A program made the position numbers and the translations under genes. This document shows, one piece after another, positions 52,793 through 63,832 of a stretch of 64,000 nucleotides of DNA (its first letter is position 1; the number at the start of each line of letters is the position of its first letter). The stretch is taken from positions 1 to 64,000 of IMG/VR virus record IMGVR_UViG_3300035181_000471; one strand, given 5' to 3'. Under the pieces are notes generated by a model. The model saw only the letters and a list, made by a program, of their open reading frames with translations, was not told the DNA's origin and searched no databases.

Positions 52793-53536
52793 ATGAGAAA
52801 ATATACTTGGAAACCAGACATACCAGATTTTAGAGATCGTGCCTACAGCACAGTAGCTCCGACTGTTCTGCCGCCTTCGATAGACCTGAGGGCGTCATTT
52901 CCACCTTGTTATGATCAGGGTCAGCTAGGTTCATGCACAAGCAATGCTATCGCAGGAGATTGTGAATTTAATATGATTTTGCAGAAAGAGGACTCGTTTA
53001 CCCCTGCAAGACTGGGAATTTACTACTTAGAAAGAAGGCTAGAGGGGACTGTAAATCAGGATTCCGGGGCTCAGATCCGTGATGGAATTAAAGTTGTGGC
53101 TAAATATGGAGTATGGCCAGAAACGATGCAGCCCTACAATATTACCAAATTCAAAAAGGCACCCACAAATGCTATGTTGAAAATTGGGGCCACTCACCAA
53201 GCCCTCACTTACGAAAGATTAGATGGGAGTCTTCTTCAGATGAAGACTCGTTTGGCCTCGGGATTTCCTTTTGTCTTCGGGTTCACTGTATATGAGTCTT
53301 TTGAGTCTGCCACGGTTGCTAAGACAGGCATCGTCCCAATGCCCAAACCCACTGAAAGTGTTCTAGGAGGCCACGCTGTTTTGGCTGTTGGATATGATGA
53401 TTCCAAAAATGCGGTCCTGGTTAGAAATTCCTGGGGTTCTGGGTGGGGACTAAACGGCTATTTCTGGCTACCATATGATTACATCACTAATCCCAATTTA
53501 GCAGATGATATGTGGGCCATTTCCAGGATGAAGTAA
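52793..53536 (+). CDS. papain-like C1A cysteine protease (xylellain-like)
   Basis: DQG.LGSC, GGHAV..VGY, RNSWG..WG..GY. Confidence 0.93.
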   Translation: MRKYTWKPDIPDFRDRAYSTVAPTVLPPSIDLRASFPPCYDQGQLGSCTSNAIAGDCEFNMILQKEDSFTPARLGIYYLERRLEGTVNQDSGAQIRDGIKVVAKYGVWPETMQPYNITKFKKAPTNAMLKIGATHQALTYERLDGSLLQMKTRLASGFPFVFGFTVYESFESATVAKTGIVPMPKPTESVLGGHAVLAVGYDDSKNAVLVRNSWGSGWGLNGYFWLPYDYITNPNLADDMWAISRMK

Positions 53537-54602: not shown

Positions 54603-54680
54603 TGGTGCCCTCGGAGGAATTCGAATCCCCGATCAAGGTTTTAGAGACCCCAGCTTTAGGCCAGACTAAGCTACGAGGGC
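54603..54680 (-). tRNA. amber suppressor tRNA (anticodon CTA)
   Basis: Perfect acceptor GCCCTCG/CGAGGGC, A73, loop CT CTA AA, TTCGAAT, CCA. Confidence 0.88.
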
Positions 54681-56142: not shown

Positions 56143-56964
56143 TTACTGGTGTATCTTGTGTCGCCTATCATTAAAGGAGAACTCAATATACTCTACTTTC
56201 TGGTTACCAGTGAATTTAGTCTTGAATTGTTCAATATATTTATTAGCTTTGCCCTTTTTGACATATGCTATTGTAGTATGAGGCGCATAGTCAGGGAATG
56301 AATTGGCGTTATCTGGGTAGACTTCATTGCAATAATCGAATAAATCCTGGAGTTCTGGACTCTTTTCAACCTTTATAATGAGAACATCGTATGGTGCATC
56401 AGCGGGAGTGAACTGGCTTAAACCTAACCACTCAACCGACTTGACTTCTAGGCTTGGGTTGAACTTGTCTGGTGTTTGGTCCTTAATTCCGTAGAGACAA
56501 GTAATGTGGGGGTAGTCCTCTTTTCCCTTGATCTCTCCATCGGTGTAGACATCCTCTGGATCAACACTTTCAACGAACTCTAGAATTTTCTTAGTGACCT
56601 CTGGAGCGTAAGTCAACTGCACTGTGCTGTAGTCGTAAGCGGCTTGCTTTGTAAGGAGTCTGGCGAAAAAGGTTAGGAACCCCTTTTTACCACCTTGGCC
56701 GTAAGCTCTATCGTGATCGCCTTGAACACTAAGAATGAACAAAACTCCTTCATCAACCTTACACACGGCTCTTATTCCTTGGGATACTCGGATGGAAAGG
56801 AAGCCTGGGTTAGACTTAATTGGTTCTAAGTGGGTTCCTGCCCCATCTCTTAGCTGTTGTTCAGTGGCCTCAGTGACTTTAATCCTCAGAGCATCAAGAA
56901 GACGCTTTATATTCGGATTCTTTTTTGCCTGTTTAGTAGCGTCTTTTCCAAGTTCCATTTGCAT
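56143..56964 (-). CDS. RelE/HigB-like domain fused to a 2H phosphoesterase (Acb1/T4 57B-like)
   Basis: N: HLEP....GFLSIRV..GIRAV.......H..Y; C: PHITCLYG and FPDY.PHTTIAY. Confidence 0.8.
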   Translation of the reverse strand: MQMELGKDATKQAKKNPNIKRLLDALRIKVTEATEQQLRDGAGTHLEPIKSNPGFLSIRVSQGIRAVCKVDEGVLFILSVQGDHDRAYGQGGKKGFLTFFARLLTKQAAYDYSTVQLTYAPEVTKKILEFVESVDPEDVYTDGEIKGKEDYPHITCLYGIKDQTPDKFNPSLEVKSVEWLGLSQFTPADAPYDVLIIKVEKSPELQDLFDYCNEVYPDNANSFPDYAPHTTIAYVKKGKANKYIEQFKTKFTGNQKVEYIEFSFNDRRHKIHQ

Positions 56965-57374: not shown

Positions 57375-57465
57375 TGGGTCCGTCCTAGGGGAGTCGAACC
57401 CCTTGTGCGTAAAATTACGCTGTGGTTTAAAAGACCACGGCCTGAACCGTGCGGCAAAGGACGGA
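57375..57465 (-). tRNA. atypical tRNA, anticodon TTT (Lys), long variable arm, 8-bp acceptor
   Basis: GTGGT-CT TTT AA-ACCAC; V arm GCGTAA/TTACGC; TCCGTCCT/AGGACGGA. Confidence 0.8.
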
Positions 57466-58378: not shown

Positions 58379-58460
58379 TGGCTCTCCATGTAGGAATCGA
58401 ACCTACTTAGCTTGCGCGACTGGTTAACAGCCAGTTACCGACCCGGACAGTATATGGAGA
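58379..58460 (-). tRNA. atypical tRNA-Asn(GTT) with extended variable arm
   Basis: ACTGG-CT GTT AA-CCAGT; V region with GC-GCAA-GC. Confidence 0.78.
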
Positions 58461-58671: not shown

Positions 58672-58733
58672 TGGTGGATACAGTGGGTATTGAACCCACC
58701 TAGGGAGCTACCCTACTCGCCTTGAGTGTACCC
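58672..58733 (-). ncRNA. 62-nt mini-tRNA with Ala identity
   Basis: GGGTACA/TGTATCC (G3.U70), A73, CCA, T arm TTCAATA, 5-nt loop TAGCT. Confidence 0.7.
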
Positions 58734-58738
58734 ATGAT

Positions 58739-58825
58739 CGGTGATCCCAAGGGGAGTCGAACCCCTACAGTCGAGGACGCCTGGGTAAGAGCCAGGGGTG
58801 GTAGCCAGTTGCCACTATTGGGACC
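58739..58825 (-). tRNA. atypical tRNA, anticodon CTT (Lys), long V arm, foldable as 8/4, no encoded CCA
   Basis: CCTGG-CT CTT AC-CCAGG; V arm GTC/GAC; GGTCCCAA/TTGGGATC; ends ACCG. Confidence 0.75.
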
Positions 58826-59583: not shown

Positions 59584-60282
59584 TCACTTCTTAATACTCA
59601 ACTTATCAAGCTCTCGATGAAGAGCTTTCAACTTTTTTGCGACTGCTGGAGCTTCCTCTTCCATAGTGTGTTCATGCCACTCTTGGCTAGGACTACTGTG
59701 TGAGTTAGTATTAAGATCCCACCACTTCTCAAGCTCGTCGATTTTAGCTTTAATTTTTTCGATCTTGTCTTTTCGAACCTCAGGGAATTCTTGGAAGGTG
59801 ATGGCGTAATCGTCCTTGTCACCCACATAGGTTCTTCCAAAGTTTACCCAGTTCTCAACATTTCTGAGTTCTTTGTAGTGTTGACCCCAGATGTAGTCTA
59901 CACCCAGCTTCTCAGGGATGGATCTTAGTTGTCTTCCTGCTCCGTAAGCACGGTATTCAGGTAGAACAAAGATTGCAACACCTTTGATACCAGTCTTGTT
60001 TTCCAAGCCGTGGACGCCTAGCTCAACTAAATCAGAGGCGGGTTTCTTCTCTTTCTTCAAGAAGTAGCCACCAATAATCTGTCCATCAGCAAGCGCAACA
60101 TAACAATTACTGAAGTTATTGCCCATTTCTTCTTTGATTTCAGTCTTTACATCCTCTTCTGATAGCCCTAAGGACTCTTTAAAGGACTTAAAACAGACAT
60201 TTAAAGCTTCAGCTACTTCGCTACGCTTCATCTTTCTGATCTGGATATCAAAGGCTGTCTTGGTGAGTAAGGTGGAAATCAT
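59584..60282 (-). CDS. GNAT-family acetyltransferase
   Basis: YVA..DGQIIG, IFVLPEYRAYGAGRQL motif A; start trimmed to MISTLL. Confidence 0.82.
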   Translation of the reverse strand: MISTLLTKTAFDIQIRKMKRSEVAEALNVCFKSFKESLGLSEEDVKTEIKEEMGNNFSNCYVALADGQIIGGYFLKKEKKPASDLVELGVHGLENKTGIKGVAIFVLPEYRAYGAGRQLRSIPEKLGVDYIWGQHYKELRNVENWVNFGRTYVGDKDDYAITFQEFPEVRKDKIEKIKAKIDELEKWWDLNTNSHSSPSQEWHEHTMEEEAPAVAKKLKALHRELDKLSIKK

Positions 60283-60319
60283 TGTGTTCTCTCTATTGAG
60301 AAATAGAAAGTTAAAAGAT

Positions 60320-60396
60320 TGGTAGTCCCAACGGGATTCGAACCCGTGATAGCCACATTGAAAGTGTGGTGCCTTAAGCCGCTTGGCTATGAGACT
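60320..60396 (-). tRNA. tRNA-Glu(TTC)
   Basis: Loop CT TTC AA. Confidence 0.9.
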
Positions 60397-60405
60397 ACGA
60401 ATTTG

Positions 60406-60505
60406 ATCATCTGGATGGAGTCGAACCATCGGCCACCCGGAGTCCCCTGCAATTTGGTCCTTAACCGTGAGAGGTGGTGCGCTCTGACCGCTGAGCTACA
60501 AATGA
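60406..60505 (-). ncRNA. tRNA-like RNA with expanded anticodon domain
   Basis: Canonical acceptor, D and T arms; about 50 nt between D and T arms; no CCA. Confidence 0.65.
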
Positions 60506-60841: not shown

Positions 60842-60928
60842 TGGTCGGTGTGACAGGAATCGAACCTGCGTTTGTCCCTAATGGACCTAGCACCCCAAGC
60901 TAGTGGTCAACCATTGACCCACACACCG
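60842..60928 (-). tRNA. atypical tRNA-Pro(GGG) with long variable arm
   Basis: Loop TT GGG GT; V arm GTCC-ATTAG-GGAC. Confidence 0.85.
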
Positions 60929-61944: not shown

Positions 61945-62029
61945 TGGTGGAACATGATGGGAATCGAACCCATAACCTCTGCACGGCATTGCGCCCAAAC
62001 AGTGTGCTTACCAAAGCCACTTCAGCCCC
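61945..62029 (-). ncRNA. tRNA-like RNA with Ala-type acceptor and elongated anticodon arm
   Basis: GGGGCTG acceptor with bulge, G3.U70, ACCA, good T arm; no 7-nt anticodon loop. Confidence 0.65.
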
Positions 62030-62035
62030 ATATAT

Positions 62036-62110
62036 TGGTGGAGCTACGGGGAGTCGAACCCCGAACTTTTGGATGCCGTCCAAATGTGTTCCCGCTAGCA
62101 CTATAGCCCC
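62036..62110 (-). tRNA. tRNA-Ala(GGC), C33
   Basis: Loop AC GGC AT, G3.U70. Confidence 0.85.
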
Positions 62111-62270: not shown

Positions 62271-62981
62271 TTAGATTGCCTTCACTATCTCATTCGCCTG
62301 ATTTTTACAAACCCAGGTGTCCAACTTTTTAAGGACTAATTGTCCATGATCAAATTCCCAATGACAGTTGGGGCAAAGACCAACCAGATTATCGGGGGCA
62401 TTGATTTCTTTCAGTGTAGCGGAATCTGGGAAACTCATTACTGCTTGAATATGGCAGACCTCCACATGCTTACTATACCCACAATTAAAACAAGAATCGG
62501 TCTTGTGGCAAACACTAGCTATTCTTTGAGCGTGTTTTGTTATAACAGACCTAGCTCTCTGCCAATTAGTGCCACCGGATTCAGATTTCCCAAATAACTC
62601 TAACTTTGTTACATGGTCTCTTTTCCCTTTTAGGGGGTCTTTCTCTGCTTTAATCTTAACTACTTTTTCCTTTTTAGGTCTAAGTTTGTTATTGTAAGAG
62701 GCCGCGCAAGAGGTGGAACAGAAAATCCCGCTTTTAGTCTGAGATGGGACTCTGTGAAACTGCTTGGAACAGTTAAAACAAGAGACCTCTAATCGAGTTA
62801 TGTTATGATCGTGAAAGCATCGTTGGGAGCAGAATAATTTGATTTGCCCTCGTCTTTTCGATATAATTAAGTTGGCCTTAGATTGAGTGGTCTCTTTCCC
62901 ACACTGCTCACAAACTACAGGAATGCGATCTTTGTATTTCTTGTCCTTATATTCGATCAGCAGCGTTTCTAGTTGAGTCAT
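62271..62981 (-). CDS. HNH homing endonuclease with N-terminal Zn ribbons
   Basis: CxxC/FCSxxC repeats; C..CGY...EVCHI...N..NL..LCPNCH. Confidence 0.88.
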   Translation of the reverse strand: MTQLETLLIEYKDKKYKDRIPVVCEQCGKETTQSKANLIISKRRGQIKLFCSQRCFHDHNITRLEVSCFNCSKQFHRVPSQTKSGIFCSTSCAASYNNKLRPKKEKVVKIKAEKDPLKGKRDHVTKLELFGKSESGGTNWQRARSVITKHAQRIASVCHKTDSCFNCGYSKHVEVCHIQAVMSFPDSATLKEINAPDNLVGLCPNCHWEFDHGQLVLKKLDTWVCKNQANEIVKAI

Positions 62982-63020
62982 AATTTCTCCCTCTATAATC
63001 AAGAGTTAGAAAGTCGATTT

Positions 63021-63745: not shown

Positions 63746-63832
63746 TGGTACTCCTGACAGGATTCGAACCTGCGTTGGGCTTTCGCCGCACGGTTTCGTA
63801 GACCGTTACTAATCCATCTCAGTTACAGGAGC
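63746..63832 (-). tRNA. atypical tRNA-Arg(ACG) with long variable arm
   Basis: Loop CT ACG AA; V arm GGC-GAAA-GCC. Confidence 0.85.

What the first reader, a model, noticed from the sequence alone, without database searches (positions are those of the whole stretch)
61945..62029. Second Ala-identity tRNA mimic, with an elongated anticodon arm
Seen: GGGGCTG 5' end (as in many tRNA-Ala and tmRNAs), G3.U70, ACCA, bulged acceptor, intact T arm, and an anticodon arm extended to CTGT..GGGC-GCAAT-GCC..GCAG with no 7-nt loop. With 58672 this makes two independent alanylatable, apparently non-decoding RNAs beside four tRNA-Ala genes.
Basis: partly seen in the sequence, partly recalled or inferred. Interest (0 to 1): 0.62.

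Follow-up and report, generated by a model that had tools for sequence, protein, structure and literature searches.

The report
Anticodon-less alanine tRNA look-alike in phage
A giant phage's tRNA gene array holds an 85-base RNA gene with every alanine-tRNA feature except a readable anticodon, and a distantly related phage keeps it almost unchanged, so it is probably a working RNA that does not read codons; its job is unknown.

Summary
On the minus strand, 62029..61945 encodes an 85-nt cloverleaf. It has a GGGGCUG acceptor with G3.U70, G4.U69, one bulged U, A73 and an encoded CCA. It also has a 3-bp D stem with GG in its loop, and a canonical T arm. Its 24-nt anticodon arm is a 5-bp stem, a 2x1 internal loop, a GGC/GCC helix and a 5-nt cap, with no 7-nt loop.

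The window is a 221-kb IMG/VR phage with about 45 tRNA genes in 53.6-64.2 kb. One other phage (G001, 210 kb) has the same RNA. Shared proteins are only 40-50% identical, yet the RNA matches at 75/85 positions and 59/61 outside the arm. The arm has 9 differences that keep or improve pairing, including U-A to C-G. It ranks 5th of 45 array elements for conservation, so a decaying pseudogene is unlikely.

It is not a tmRNA or a TLD-only tmRNA: models of both score it below real tRNA-Ala. It looks like a tRNA-Ala(GGC) whose anticodon is paired in cis by a short insertion.

Charging by host AlaRS is plausible but untested, and no RNA data exist. Neither phage encodes AlaRS, SmpB, FemAB, a splicing endonuclease or RtcB. 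The function is unknown; my best guess is an off-ribosome decoy or alanine carrier.

The parts
61945..62029 (-). Whole 85-nt tRNA-Ala-like RNA gene with an extended, capped anticodon arm
   Evidence: Sequence. Homologue in phage G001 at L047:2139-2222 = L207:10277-10360, 75/85 identical.
62023..62029 (-). Acceptor 5' strand GGGGCUG (G3 at 62027)
   Evidence: Read from the sequence. Identical in G001.
61949..61956 (-). Acceptor 3' strand CA(U)GUUCC with the bulged U at 61954; U70 at 61951, U69 at 61952
   Evidence: Read from the sequence. The bulge is identical in G001. Ordinary viral tRNA-Ala genes have the same stem without the U.
61945..61948 (-). Discriminator A73 and encoded CCA
   Evidence: Read from the sequence.
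62004..62020 (-). D arm: 3-bp stem GUG/CAC and an 11-nt loop containing GG
   Evidence: Appears in the MFE fold of the G001 copy. It has the same GUG/CAC stem as the neighbouring tRNA-Ala(GGC). The stem columns do not vary, so there is no covariation test.
61979..62002 (-). Extended anticodon arm: 5-bp outer stem, 2x1 internal loop, GGC/GCC helix and a 5-nt cap (4 nt in G001)
   Evidence: Folds as drawn. Carries 9 of the 11 differences from G001, all of which keep or improve pairing, including U-A to C-G. A second allele is seen in metagenome contigs.
61993..61995 (-). GGC, at the place of the anticodon of tRNA-Ala(GGC), paired in cis with GCC at 61985-61987
   Evidence: The CM alignment puts it on the anticodon of 62036-62110. 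Invariant in both phages.
61957..61973 (-). T arm AUGGG-UUCGAUU-CCCAU
   Evidence: Canonical T loop. One change in G001, U-A to U.G, keeps the pair.
62036..62110 (-). Context: tRNA-Ala(GGC) 6 nt upstream, the closest paralogue
   Evidence: ARAGORN and Rfam. It is the next-best match of model R1, at 42 bits.

Best explanation
This is a selectively maintained, non-decoding derivative of a phage tRNA-Ala(GGC) gene.

Shown:
- It keeps the acceptor, D, variable and T regions of an L-shaped tRNA and the alanine identity set (G3.U70, A73).
- The former anticodon GGC is base-paired in cis to GCC supplied by a short insertion.
- As a result the arm is a closed helix about 3 bp longer than normal, with no U33 and no 7-nt loop.
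- Two phages whose proteins are only 40-50% identical keep the body almost unchanged, while the arm changes in sequence but not in pairing.

Inferred:
- It is transcribed with the array.
- It is cut out by RNase P and 3' trimming down to its encoded CCA.
- It is alanylated by the host's AlaRS, which does not read the anticodon.
- It cannot pair with a codon or fit the decoding centre, so it acts off the ribosome through its acceptor/T half.

Most likely role (guess, about 0.3): a decoy or competitor that occupies a host factor recognising the tRNA-Ala/tmRNA-type acceptor end, such as AlaRS, EF-Tu or an acceptor-end-directed toxin.

Next most likely role (about 0.15): a non-translating carrier of alanine for a tRNA-dependent transferase.

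The confidence given is for 'functional, non-decoding tRNA-Ala derivative', not for either specific role.
For: - Structure and identity elements can be read from the sequence and folded.
- The homologue in G001 is 75/85 identical and 59/61 outside the arm.
- Orthologous proteins of the two phages are 40-52% identical and the spacers do not align.
- The RNA ranks 5th of 45 array elements for conservation; non-orthologous tRNAs give a background of 65-70%.
- Differences cluster in the arm: 9 of 24 positions against 2 of 61 (Fisher p = 1.2e-4).
- Every stem change keeps or gains a pair: 29-50 U-A to C-G, 31-48 U.G to U-A, 32-47 U.U to U-A, 58-72 U-A to U.G. Overall 97.8% of cells are paired, against 35-59% when the partners are slid.
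- Both flanks differ between the phages: Ala(GGC)/Phe in G000, Ala(UGC)/Lys in G001. The unit has therefore survived array rearrangement.
- Metagenome contigs from four samples carry it.
- Its acceptor equals that of many ordinary viral tRNA-Ala genes plus one U.
- That AlaRS recognises G3.U70 independently of the anticodon is established knowledge.
Against: - Only two full sequences exist, so the covariation statistics have no power (256/500 shuffles reach the observed values).
- The two phage types co-occur in the same samples and the arm alleles recombine. Part of the high body identity could therefore reflect recent exchange rather than long selection.
- There is no expression or charging data.
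- Closer relatives by terminase (G002-G004) lack it, though they are 14-49% complete and the two that carry tRNAs (G002, G003) show only about 6.
- A8 instead of U8 and the acceptor bulge could impair folding, RNase P processing or AlaRS recognition.
- Neither phage encodes a partner protein that was looked for.
Confidence: 0.55

Rival explanations
1. It is a dead tRNA-Ala(GGC) gene, ruined by an insertion in the anticodon loop and a 1-nt insertion in the acceptor. On this view it looks conserved only because it moved recently between co-occurring phages.
For: - It has two lesions relative to a normal tRNA-Ala: the arm insertion and the bulged U.
- Phage arrays hold other odd elements, and the 62-nt element at 58672-58733 has no counterpart in G001.
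- Recombination between the two phage types is visible.
- It is absent from G002-G004.
Against: - A recent transfer would not leave 9 differences in 24 nt of the arm beside 2 in 61 nt of the body (p = 1.2e-4).
- All stem changes keep pairing, and one is compensatory.
- Both lesions are kept exactly in both phages.
- Spacers next to it have diverged beyond alignment.
Confidence: 0.15
2. It is a TLD-only tmRNA, like the one in mycobacteriophage DS6A. Such an RNA would bind SmpB and block or redirect trans-translation.
For: - It has the GGGGCUG...CCACCA ends, A8 as in tmRNA, G3.U70 and no anticodon.
- It gives a weak Rfam tmRNA match (23.1 bits, E = 3.9e-6).
- TLD-only tmRNAs are known in a phage, and a similar molecule inhibits tmRNA (PMC4131195, PMC11915505).
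- They are common in IMG/VR.
Against: - Real tRNA-Ala genes of the same array score higher on the tmRNA model: 39.1 and 27.9 bits.
- They also score higher on a model built from 15 phage TLD-only RNAs: 37-39 bits against 31.4 and 28.4 for the two copies.
- It has a D stem and a full-length arm where SmpB would sit.
- The UUCGAC and GGAC motifs of the TLD are absent.
- G001 carries a true tmRNA as well.
- Neither phage encodes SmpB.
Confidence: 0.08
3. It is a decoding tRNA after all. Either the 6-7 nt after position 37 are removed like a mini-intron, or the inner GGC/GCC helix opens to give a large loop that reads GCC or a quadruplet.
For: - The insertion lies at or near the canonical intron site.
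- The anticodon-insert helix resembles the anticodon-intron helix of intron-bearing pre-tRNAs (established knowledge).
- Other tRNA-like genes of these phages carry roughly 25-40-nt insertions in the anticodon arm.
- The inner helix is only 3 bp.
Against: - Position 33 is G, not U, in both phages.
- There is no bulge-helix-bulge motif.
- Neither phage encodes a tRNA splicing endonuclease or RtcB.
- The tRNA-His has the bacterial encoded G-1, so the host is bacterial.
- The insert differs in length between the phages (7 against 6 nt).
- Ala codons are already covered by UGC, GGC and CGC tRNAs.
- The loop sequence is not conserved, which is the opposite of what a decoding tRNA shows.
Confidence: 0.07

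Closest known systems
Canonical bacterial/phage tRNA-Ala, in particular the neighbouring tRNA-Ala(GGC) at 62036-62110
   Same: - Same acceptor type: GGGGCU., G3.U70, A73 and CCA.
- Same GUG/CAC D stem, a 5-nt variable loop and a canonical T arm.
- GGC sits at the anticodon position.
   Different: - One bulged U in the acceptor 3' strand.
- A8 instead of U8.
- The anticodon loop is replaced by a closed helix with a 4-5-nt cap, and the arm is 23-24 nt instead of 17.
- It is not called by ARAGORN or by the Rfam tRNA model.
TLD-only (tag-less) tmRNA of mycobacteriophage DS6A, and the 81-86-nt class seen here in IMG/VR
   Same: A phage-encoded RNA of about 80 nt with an Ala-type acceptor, a T arm and no anticodon, where the arm is replaced by a plain helix. 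A similar molecule is reported to inhibit tmRNA, perhaps by titrating SmpB (PMC4131195).
   Different: - The candidate keeps a tRNA-type D stem and variable loop.
- It lacks the UUCGAC/GGAC signature.
- It scores below ordinary tRNA-Ala on the tmRNA and TLD-only models.
Non-proteogenic tRNA-Gly isoacceptors of Staphylococcus aureus (PMC7826273)
   Same: A tRNA-shaped aminoacyl carrier kept apart from translation that serves a reaction off the ribosome. This is a possible analogy for an alanine-carrier role.
   Different: Those tRNAs keep a normal anticodon loop and are held away from translation by weak EF-Tu binding. No tRNA-dependent transferase (FemAB family) was found in these phages.
Intron-containing pre-tRNAs of archaea and eukaryotes (anticodon-intron helix)
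   Same: An insertion next to position 37 pairs with the anticodon and lengthens the anticodon arm.
   Different: - The insert is only 6-7 nt.
- There is no bulge-helix-bulge motif.
- The host is bacterial.
- Neither phage encodes a splicing endonuclease or RtcB.

Membership tests
tRNA (Rfam RF00005 / ARAGORN) | Cloverleaf with a 5-bp anticodon stem and a 7-nt loop (U33, anticodon at 34-36) | tested here: not met
   No ARAGORN call, even at relaxed thresholds with introns allowed. Any RF00005 match scores below the listed 23.1-bit tmRNA match, under RF00005's own 29-bit gathering score. The arm is 24 nt with G at position 33.
tRNA (Rfam RF00005 / ARAGORN) | 7-bp acceptor stem stacked on a 5-bp T stem, with a T loop UUCRANY and G18G19 in the D loop | tested here: met
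   Read from the sequence. There is one extra bulged U in the acceptor.
tRNA-Ala identity (AlaRS substrate) | G3.U70 wobble pair in the acceptor stem, A73 and G2-C71 | tested here: met
   Read from the sequence and invariant in G001.
tRNA-Ala identity (AlaRS substrate) | Is actually charged with alanine | not testable with these tools
   Needs an AlaRS assay or an acid-urea gel. The effect of the bulge and of G4.U69 is unknown, although G4.U69 is common in ordinary viral tRNA-Ala genes.
tmRNA (Rfam RF00023) | Reaches the gathering score; has a tag reading frame and pseudoknots between the two halves of the TLD | tested here: not met
   It scores 23.1 bits against a threshold of 47, lower than true tRNA-Ala genes (39.1 and 27.9 bits). 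It is only 85 nt and has no ORF. G001's real tmRNA scores 93.4 bits.
TLD-only tmRNA (DS6A type) | D-loop analogue GG..UUCGAC without a D stem, a P2 helix closed by GGAC before the T arm, and a better fit to a TLD-only model than tRNAs give | tested here: not met
   On model R2, built from 15 phage TLD-only RNAs, the candidate scores 31.4 bits and the G001 copy 28.4. The highest-scoring tRNA-Ala genes score 37-39. The motifs are absent from the sequence.
Permuted (two-piece) tmRNA (RF04321) | An acceptor piece followed by a coding piece with a tag ORF, above the gathering score | tested here: not met
   The 36.2-bit match (threshold 47) at 62014-62063 only spans the 3' end of tRNA-Ala(GGC) and the 5' end of the candidate, that is, two tandem Ala-type genes.
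Intron-containing tRNA | A bulge-helix-bulge or group I intron, and a splicing system available | tested here: not met
   There is no BHB motif in the arm. The insert, at 6-7 nt, is far too short for a group I intron. PF01974 and PF01139 are absent from G000 and G001. Host enzymes are unknown.
tRNA pseudogene | Evolves like the surrounding non-coding DNA, with helix-breaking changes tolerated | tested here: not met
   It is 88% identical to the G001 copy (97% outside the arm), while the spacers are unalignable and proteins are 40-52% identical. No change breaks a helix. Caveat: only two sequences, and recombination is seen.

The most novel reading that the evidence does not exclude
This would be a new class of phage RNA: an alanine-charged tRNA body whose anticodon is permanently capped by its own codon-like strand (GGC paired with GCC).

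Its possible uses are either to deliver or hold alanine outside normal decoding, or to enter ribosomes whose A site holds no codon, without needing SmpB. The arm would be swapped between phages as a cassette.
Probability: 0.1. Interest if true: 0.8.

Novelty: new variant of a known kind. Interest (0 to 1): 0.5.

Why it matters
Phage tRNA arrays are usually read as codon-usage or anti-defence supplies of decoding tRNAs. A conserved member that keeps the alanine acceptor end but cannot decode would show that these arrays also encode tRNA-shaped effectors that act off the ribosome. TLD-only tmRNAs, which turned out to be common in viral contigs during this work, point the same way.

The RNA is small and its predicted properties are simple to test: stability, charging by AlaRS, EF-Tu and ribosome binding, and an effect on trans-translation.

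Its reach is narrow for now. It has been found in two phage genomes and a few metagenome variants from sediments and microbial mats, and its function is unknown.

Tried and rejected
- **More homologues.** Five IMG/VR pattern scans, one JGI metagenome scan and two scans of GTDB species genomes found only G001. Model R1, run over about 70 fetched loci and five phage records, found nothing above ordinary tRNA-Ala, at most 50 bits against 110 for the true copies.
- **GenBank phages.** Only generic tRNA matches.
- **Synteny through the neighbouring ORF.** This failed because the ORF is a mobile HNH endonuclease.
- **Terminase relatives.** G002-G004 lack the RNA, but they are fragments; G002 and G003 carry about 6 tRNAs each and none was found in G004.
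- **Partner proteins.** SmpB, AlaRS, FemAB, the tRNA splicing endonuclease and RtcB are all absent from G000 and G001. The weak GNAT ORF inside the array (59584-60429) is not found in the fetched part of G001 (178-210.6 kb), which includes its tRNA array.
- **Antisense target of the arm in G000.** One 12-mer was found, within chance.
- **An 8/4 or 9/3 acceptor/T layout (PMC5389517).** It does not pair; the bulge reading is the only one that does.
- **Another genetic code.** The standard code already covers 91% of G000 with open frames of 120 aa or more.
- **Fold energy against shuffles.** Not informative (z = 0.14).
- **Covariation statistics.** Two sequences give no power.
- **Expression.** No RNA run holds the stretch.
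- **Promoter and terminator scan.** Nothing above the shuffled expectation.

Full report
**What is there**

The window is the first 64 kb of a 221-kb IMG/VR virus record, G000, estimated 77% complete. All of its tRNA genes lie on the minus strand between 53.6 and 64.2 kb. ARAGORN finds 36-37, and Rfam and T-loop scans bring the count of tRNA-like units to about 45. Nearly all have an encoded CCA.

The finding is the 85 nt from 62029 down to 61945, between tRNA-Ala(GGC) 6 nt upstream and a tRNA-Phe 17 nt downstream. Its parts, read from the sequence:
- Acceptor GGGGCUG paired with CA(U)GUUCC, giving G3.U70, G4.U69 and one bulged U.
- A73 and CCA.
- A8 and A9.
- D stem GUG/CAC with GG in its loop.
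- Variable loop AGGUU.
- T arm AUGGG-UUCGAUU-CCCAU.
- A 24-nt anticodon arm made of a 5-bp stem (CUGUU/UGCAG, with U.G and U.U at its inner end), a 2x1 internal loop, a GGC/GCC helix and a GCAAU cap.

The arm has no 7-nt loop, and position 33 is G. The arm alone folds this way in both alleles, and the full G001 copy folds into exactly this cloverleaf as its MFE structure. The MFE fold of the window copy keeps the acceptor, anticodon arm and most of the T stem but draws the D-stem strands into a longer helix stacked on the acceptor. ARAGORN never calls it, and its best Rfam match is the tmRNA model at 23 bits, under threshold.

**Is it alive?**

A degenerate pattern scan of IMG/VR found one homologue, in a 210-kb phage G001 (L047:2139-2222 = L207:10277-10360). 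The two copies match at 75 of 85 positions. Outside the arm, 59 of 61 positions are identical. The arm holds 9 of the 11 differences (Fisher p = 1.2e-4).

No difference breaks a helix:
- 29-50 goes from U-A to C-G.
- 31-48 goes from U.G to U-A.
- 32-47 goes from U.U to U-A.
- 58-72 goes from U-A to U.G.
- The GGC/GCC helix is invariant.
- The cap changes from GCAAU to GUAC.

With two sequences the shuffle statistics have no power. Even so, 97.8% of cells pair, against 35-59% when the partners are slid.

The two phages are far apart:
- Shared proteins near the arrays are 40-52% identical.
- The arrays are rearranged and only the tRNAs align.
- The RNA ranks 5th of 45 array elements for conservation at 88.2%, against a background of 65-70% for non-orthologous tRNAs.
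- Its neighbours differ on both sides: Ala(GGC)/Phe in G000, Ala(UGC)/Lys(CUU) in G001.

This is the pattern of a functional RNA whose acceptor, D and T body is under sequence constraint and whose arm is under structural constraint only. It is the reverse of a decoding tRNA, in which the anticodon loop is the most conserved part.

**Population data**

The stretch occurs in sediment and microbial-mat metagenomes; no RNA run holds it. Laying the contigs of four runs showed the G001-type arm in all four.

In two runs (X2, X4) it was the only arm allele laid at those places. In X2 it lies on a contig that is otherwise identical to the window across tRNA-Asn, tRNA-Ala(GGC) and the spacers. That X2 contig carries one further change, U31 to C, at depth below 5, which may be an error.

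The arm is therefore exchanged as a short tract between co-occurring phages. This adds a third genomic context. It also weakens the conservation argument somewhat, because recombination could homogenise the body.

**What it is not**

- *tmRNA or TLD-only tmRNA.* TLD stands for the tRNA-like domain of tmRNA. True tRNA-Ala genes of the same array score higher on RF00023 (39.1 and 27.9 bits against 23.1). The RF04321 match at 62014-62063 only bridges two tandem Ala-type genes.
- *The TLD-only class found here.* While scanning for long Ala-acceptor RNAs I found a recurrent 81-86-nt class in viral contigs that is a tmRNA tRNA-like domain and nothing else. It shows clear covariation in its P2 and T helices. 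This kind is known from mycobacteriophage DS6A, and a similar molecule inhibits tmRNA, perhaps by titrating SmpB (PMC4131195, PMC11915505). A model built from 15 of them gives the candidate 31.4 bits and the G001 copy 28.4, below the best-scoring tRNA-Ala genes at 37-39. The candidate also has a D stem and a full arm where SmpB would bind.
- *A substitute for a missing tmRNA.* G001 carries a real tmRNA (93 bits, tag AEPQLALAA) in addition to the candidate. The G000 record has none. Neither phage encodes SmpB.
- *An intron-bearing tRNA.* There is no bulge-helix-bulge motif and the insert is only 6-7 nt. Neither phage has a splicing endonuclease or RtcB. The host is bacterial, as shown by the encoded G-1 of tRNA-His.

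**Origin**

Model R1, built from the two copies, ranks the neighbouring tRNA-Ala(GGC) next, at 42 bits. It aligns the candidate's GGC to that tRNA's anticodon, followed by a roughly 9-nt insertion.

The acceptor equals a very common viral tRNA-Ala acceptor (GGGGCUG/CAGUUCC) plus one U.

The simplest history is a duplicated tRNA-Ala(GGC) that gained an insert pairing with its anticodon, and a bulge in the acceptor.

**How it probably works**

- *Shown.* A conserved L-shaped body with the alanine identity set, and a capped, lengthened arm that cannot present an anticodon.
- *Inferred from established knowledge.* RNase P and 3' trimming release it. AlaRS, which reads G3.U70 and not the anticodon, charges it. 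It cannot be selected at the decoding centre.

It therefore acts through its acceptor/T half. I put about 0.55 on 'functional, non-decoding tRNA-Ala derivative'. Within that, I put about 0.3 on a decoy or competitor for a factor that binds Ala-type acceptor ends. I put about 0.15 on a non-translating alanine carrier, by analogy with the non-proteogenic tRNA-Gly of S. aureus (PMC7826273).

No phage-encoded partner was found: AlaRS and FemAB are absent. No antisense target of the arm exists in G000 beyond chance.

**Rivals**

- Relic kept similar by recent exchange: 0.15.
- TLD-type SmpB binder: 0.08.
- Decoding after processing or loop opening: 0.07.

**Limits**

- The family is narrow. Eight collection scans and two covariance searches found no further member.
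- Terminase relatives G002-G004 lack it, but they are 14-49% complete and the two that carry tRNAs (G002, G003) show about 6 each.
The picture of two such RNAs therefore rests on this one.

**Verdict**

It is probably functional: a new variant of a known kind, namely tRNA-shaped RNAs without an anticodon. The mechanism is open. Interest is 0.5.

Noticed in passing
L137:13090-13170(-), L164:123-206(-), L161:2681-2762(-), L167:10575-10656(-), L168:5456-5537(-), L171:9368-9450(-), L175:4066-4151(-) and 8 more (alignment A2): A recurrent 81-86-nt RNA in unrelated IMG/VR contigs that is a tmRNA tRNA-like domain only: GGGGCUG, GG..UUCGAC, a P2 helix, a small internal hairpin, GGAC, a T arm and CCA. 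Eight of 16 predicted pairs show compensatory changes. This kind is known from mycobacteriophage DS6A but appears far more widespread in phages.
   Followed up: partly
L207:6444-6784 (G001:C1:184444-184784): Phage G001 carries a full tmRNA gene inside its tRNA array (Rfam 93.4 bits; ARAGORN tag AEPQLALAA), without an encoded CCA. The G000 record has none, and neither phage encodes SmpB.
   Followed up: partly
window 60403-60505 (-); L207:4597-4712 (+): Two tRNA-like genes carry long insertions in the anticodon arm. One is a 100-nt unit in the window whose arm is a long closed helix and whose 3' end is not CCA. The other is a 116-nt unit in G001 with a roughly 40-nt insert after CUUAU in the anticodon loop. 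Both inserts are too short for group I introns, and no splicing enzymes were found in the phages.
   Followed up: partly
window 57375-57465, 58740-58825, 60842-60928, 63746-63832, 58379-58460 (all -): tRNAs that are normally class I carry long variable arms here and are 82-91 nt long: Lys UUU, Lys CUU, Pro GGG, Arg ACG and Asn GUU. G003 has a 100-nt tRNA-Ile(UAU) with a two-hairpin variable region (L208:5139-5241).
   Followed up: no
It folds well (z = -2.7) but has no counterpart in G001 (best match 63%, which is background).
   Followed up: partly
window 61979-62002 in runs X1-X4: The candidate's arm exists as two alleles differing at 9 of 24 positions. In runs X2 and X4 the G001-type arm is the only allele laid, and in X2 it sits on a contig otherwise identical to the window over more than 300 nt. 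This points to short-tract recombination or cassette-like exchange.
   Followed up: partly
window 54603-54680 (-); L207:14253-14328: Both phages encode an amber suppressor tRNA (anticodon CUA). Even so, the standard code already leaves 91% of G000 in open frames of 120 aa or more, so there is no wholesale TAG recoding.
   Followed up: partly
window 62271-63002 (-), 56143-56964 (-), 52793-53536 (+): Protein genes lie inside or beside the array: an HNH endonuclease with a zinc finger, a weak 2H phosphoesterase / Acb1-like protein, and a papain-family cysteine protease on the opposite strand.
   Followed up: no
L096:4774-4857(-), L076:10035-10118(-), L187:478-561(-); L107:1049-1121(-) and 4 identical copies: Other odd Ala-acceptor RNAs turn up in viral and metagenome contigs. 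One is an 84-nt unit with a 7-bp helix in place of the anticodon arm. Another is a 73-nt tRNA-Ala(GGC)-like unit with a reduced D region and a mismatched acceptor base, found in five contigs.
   Followed up: no
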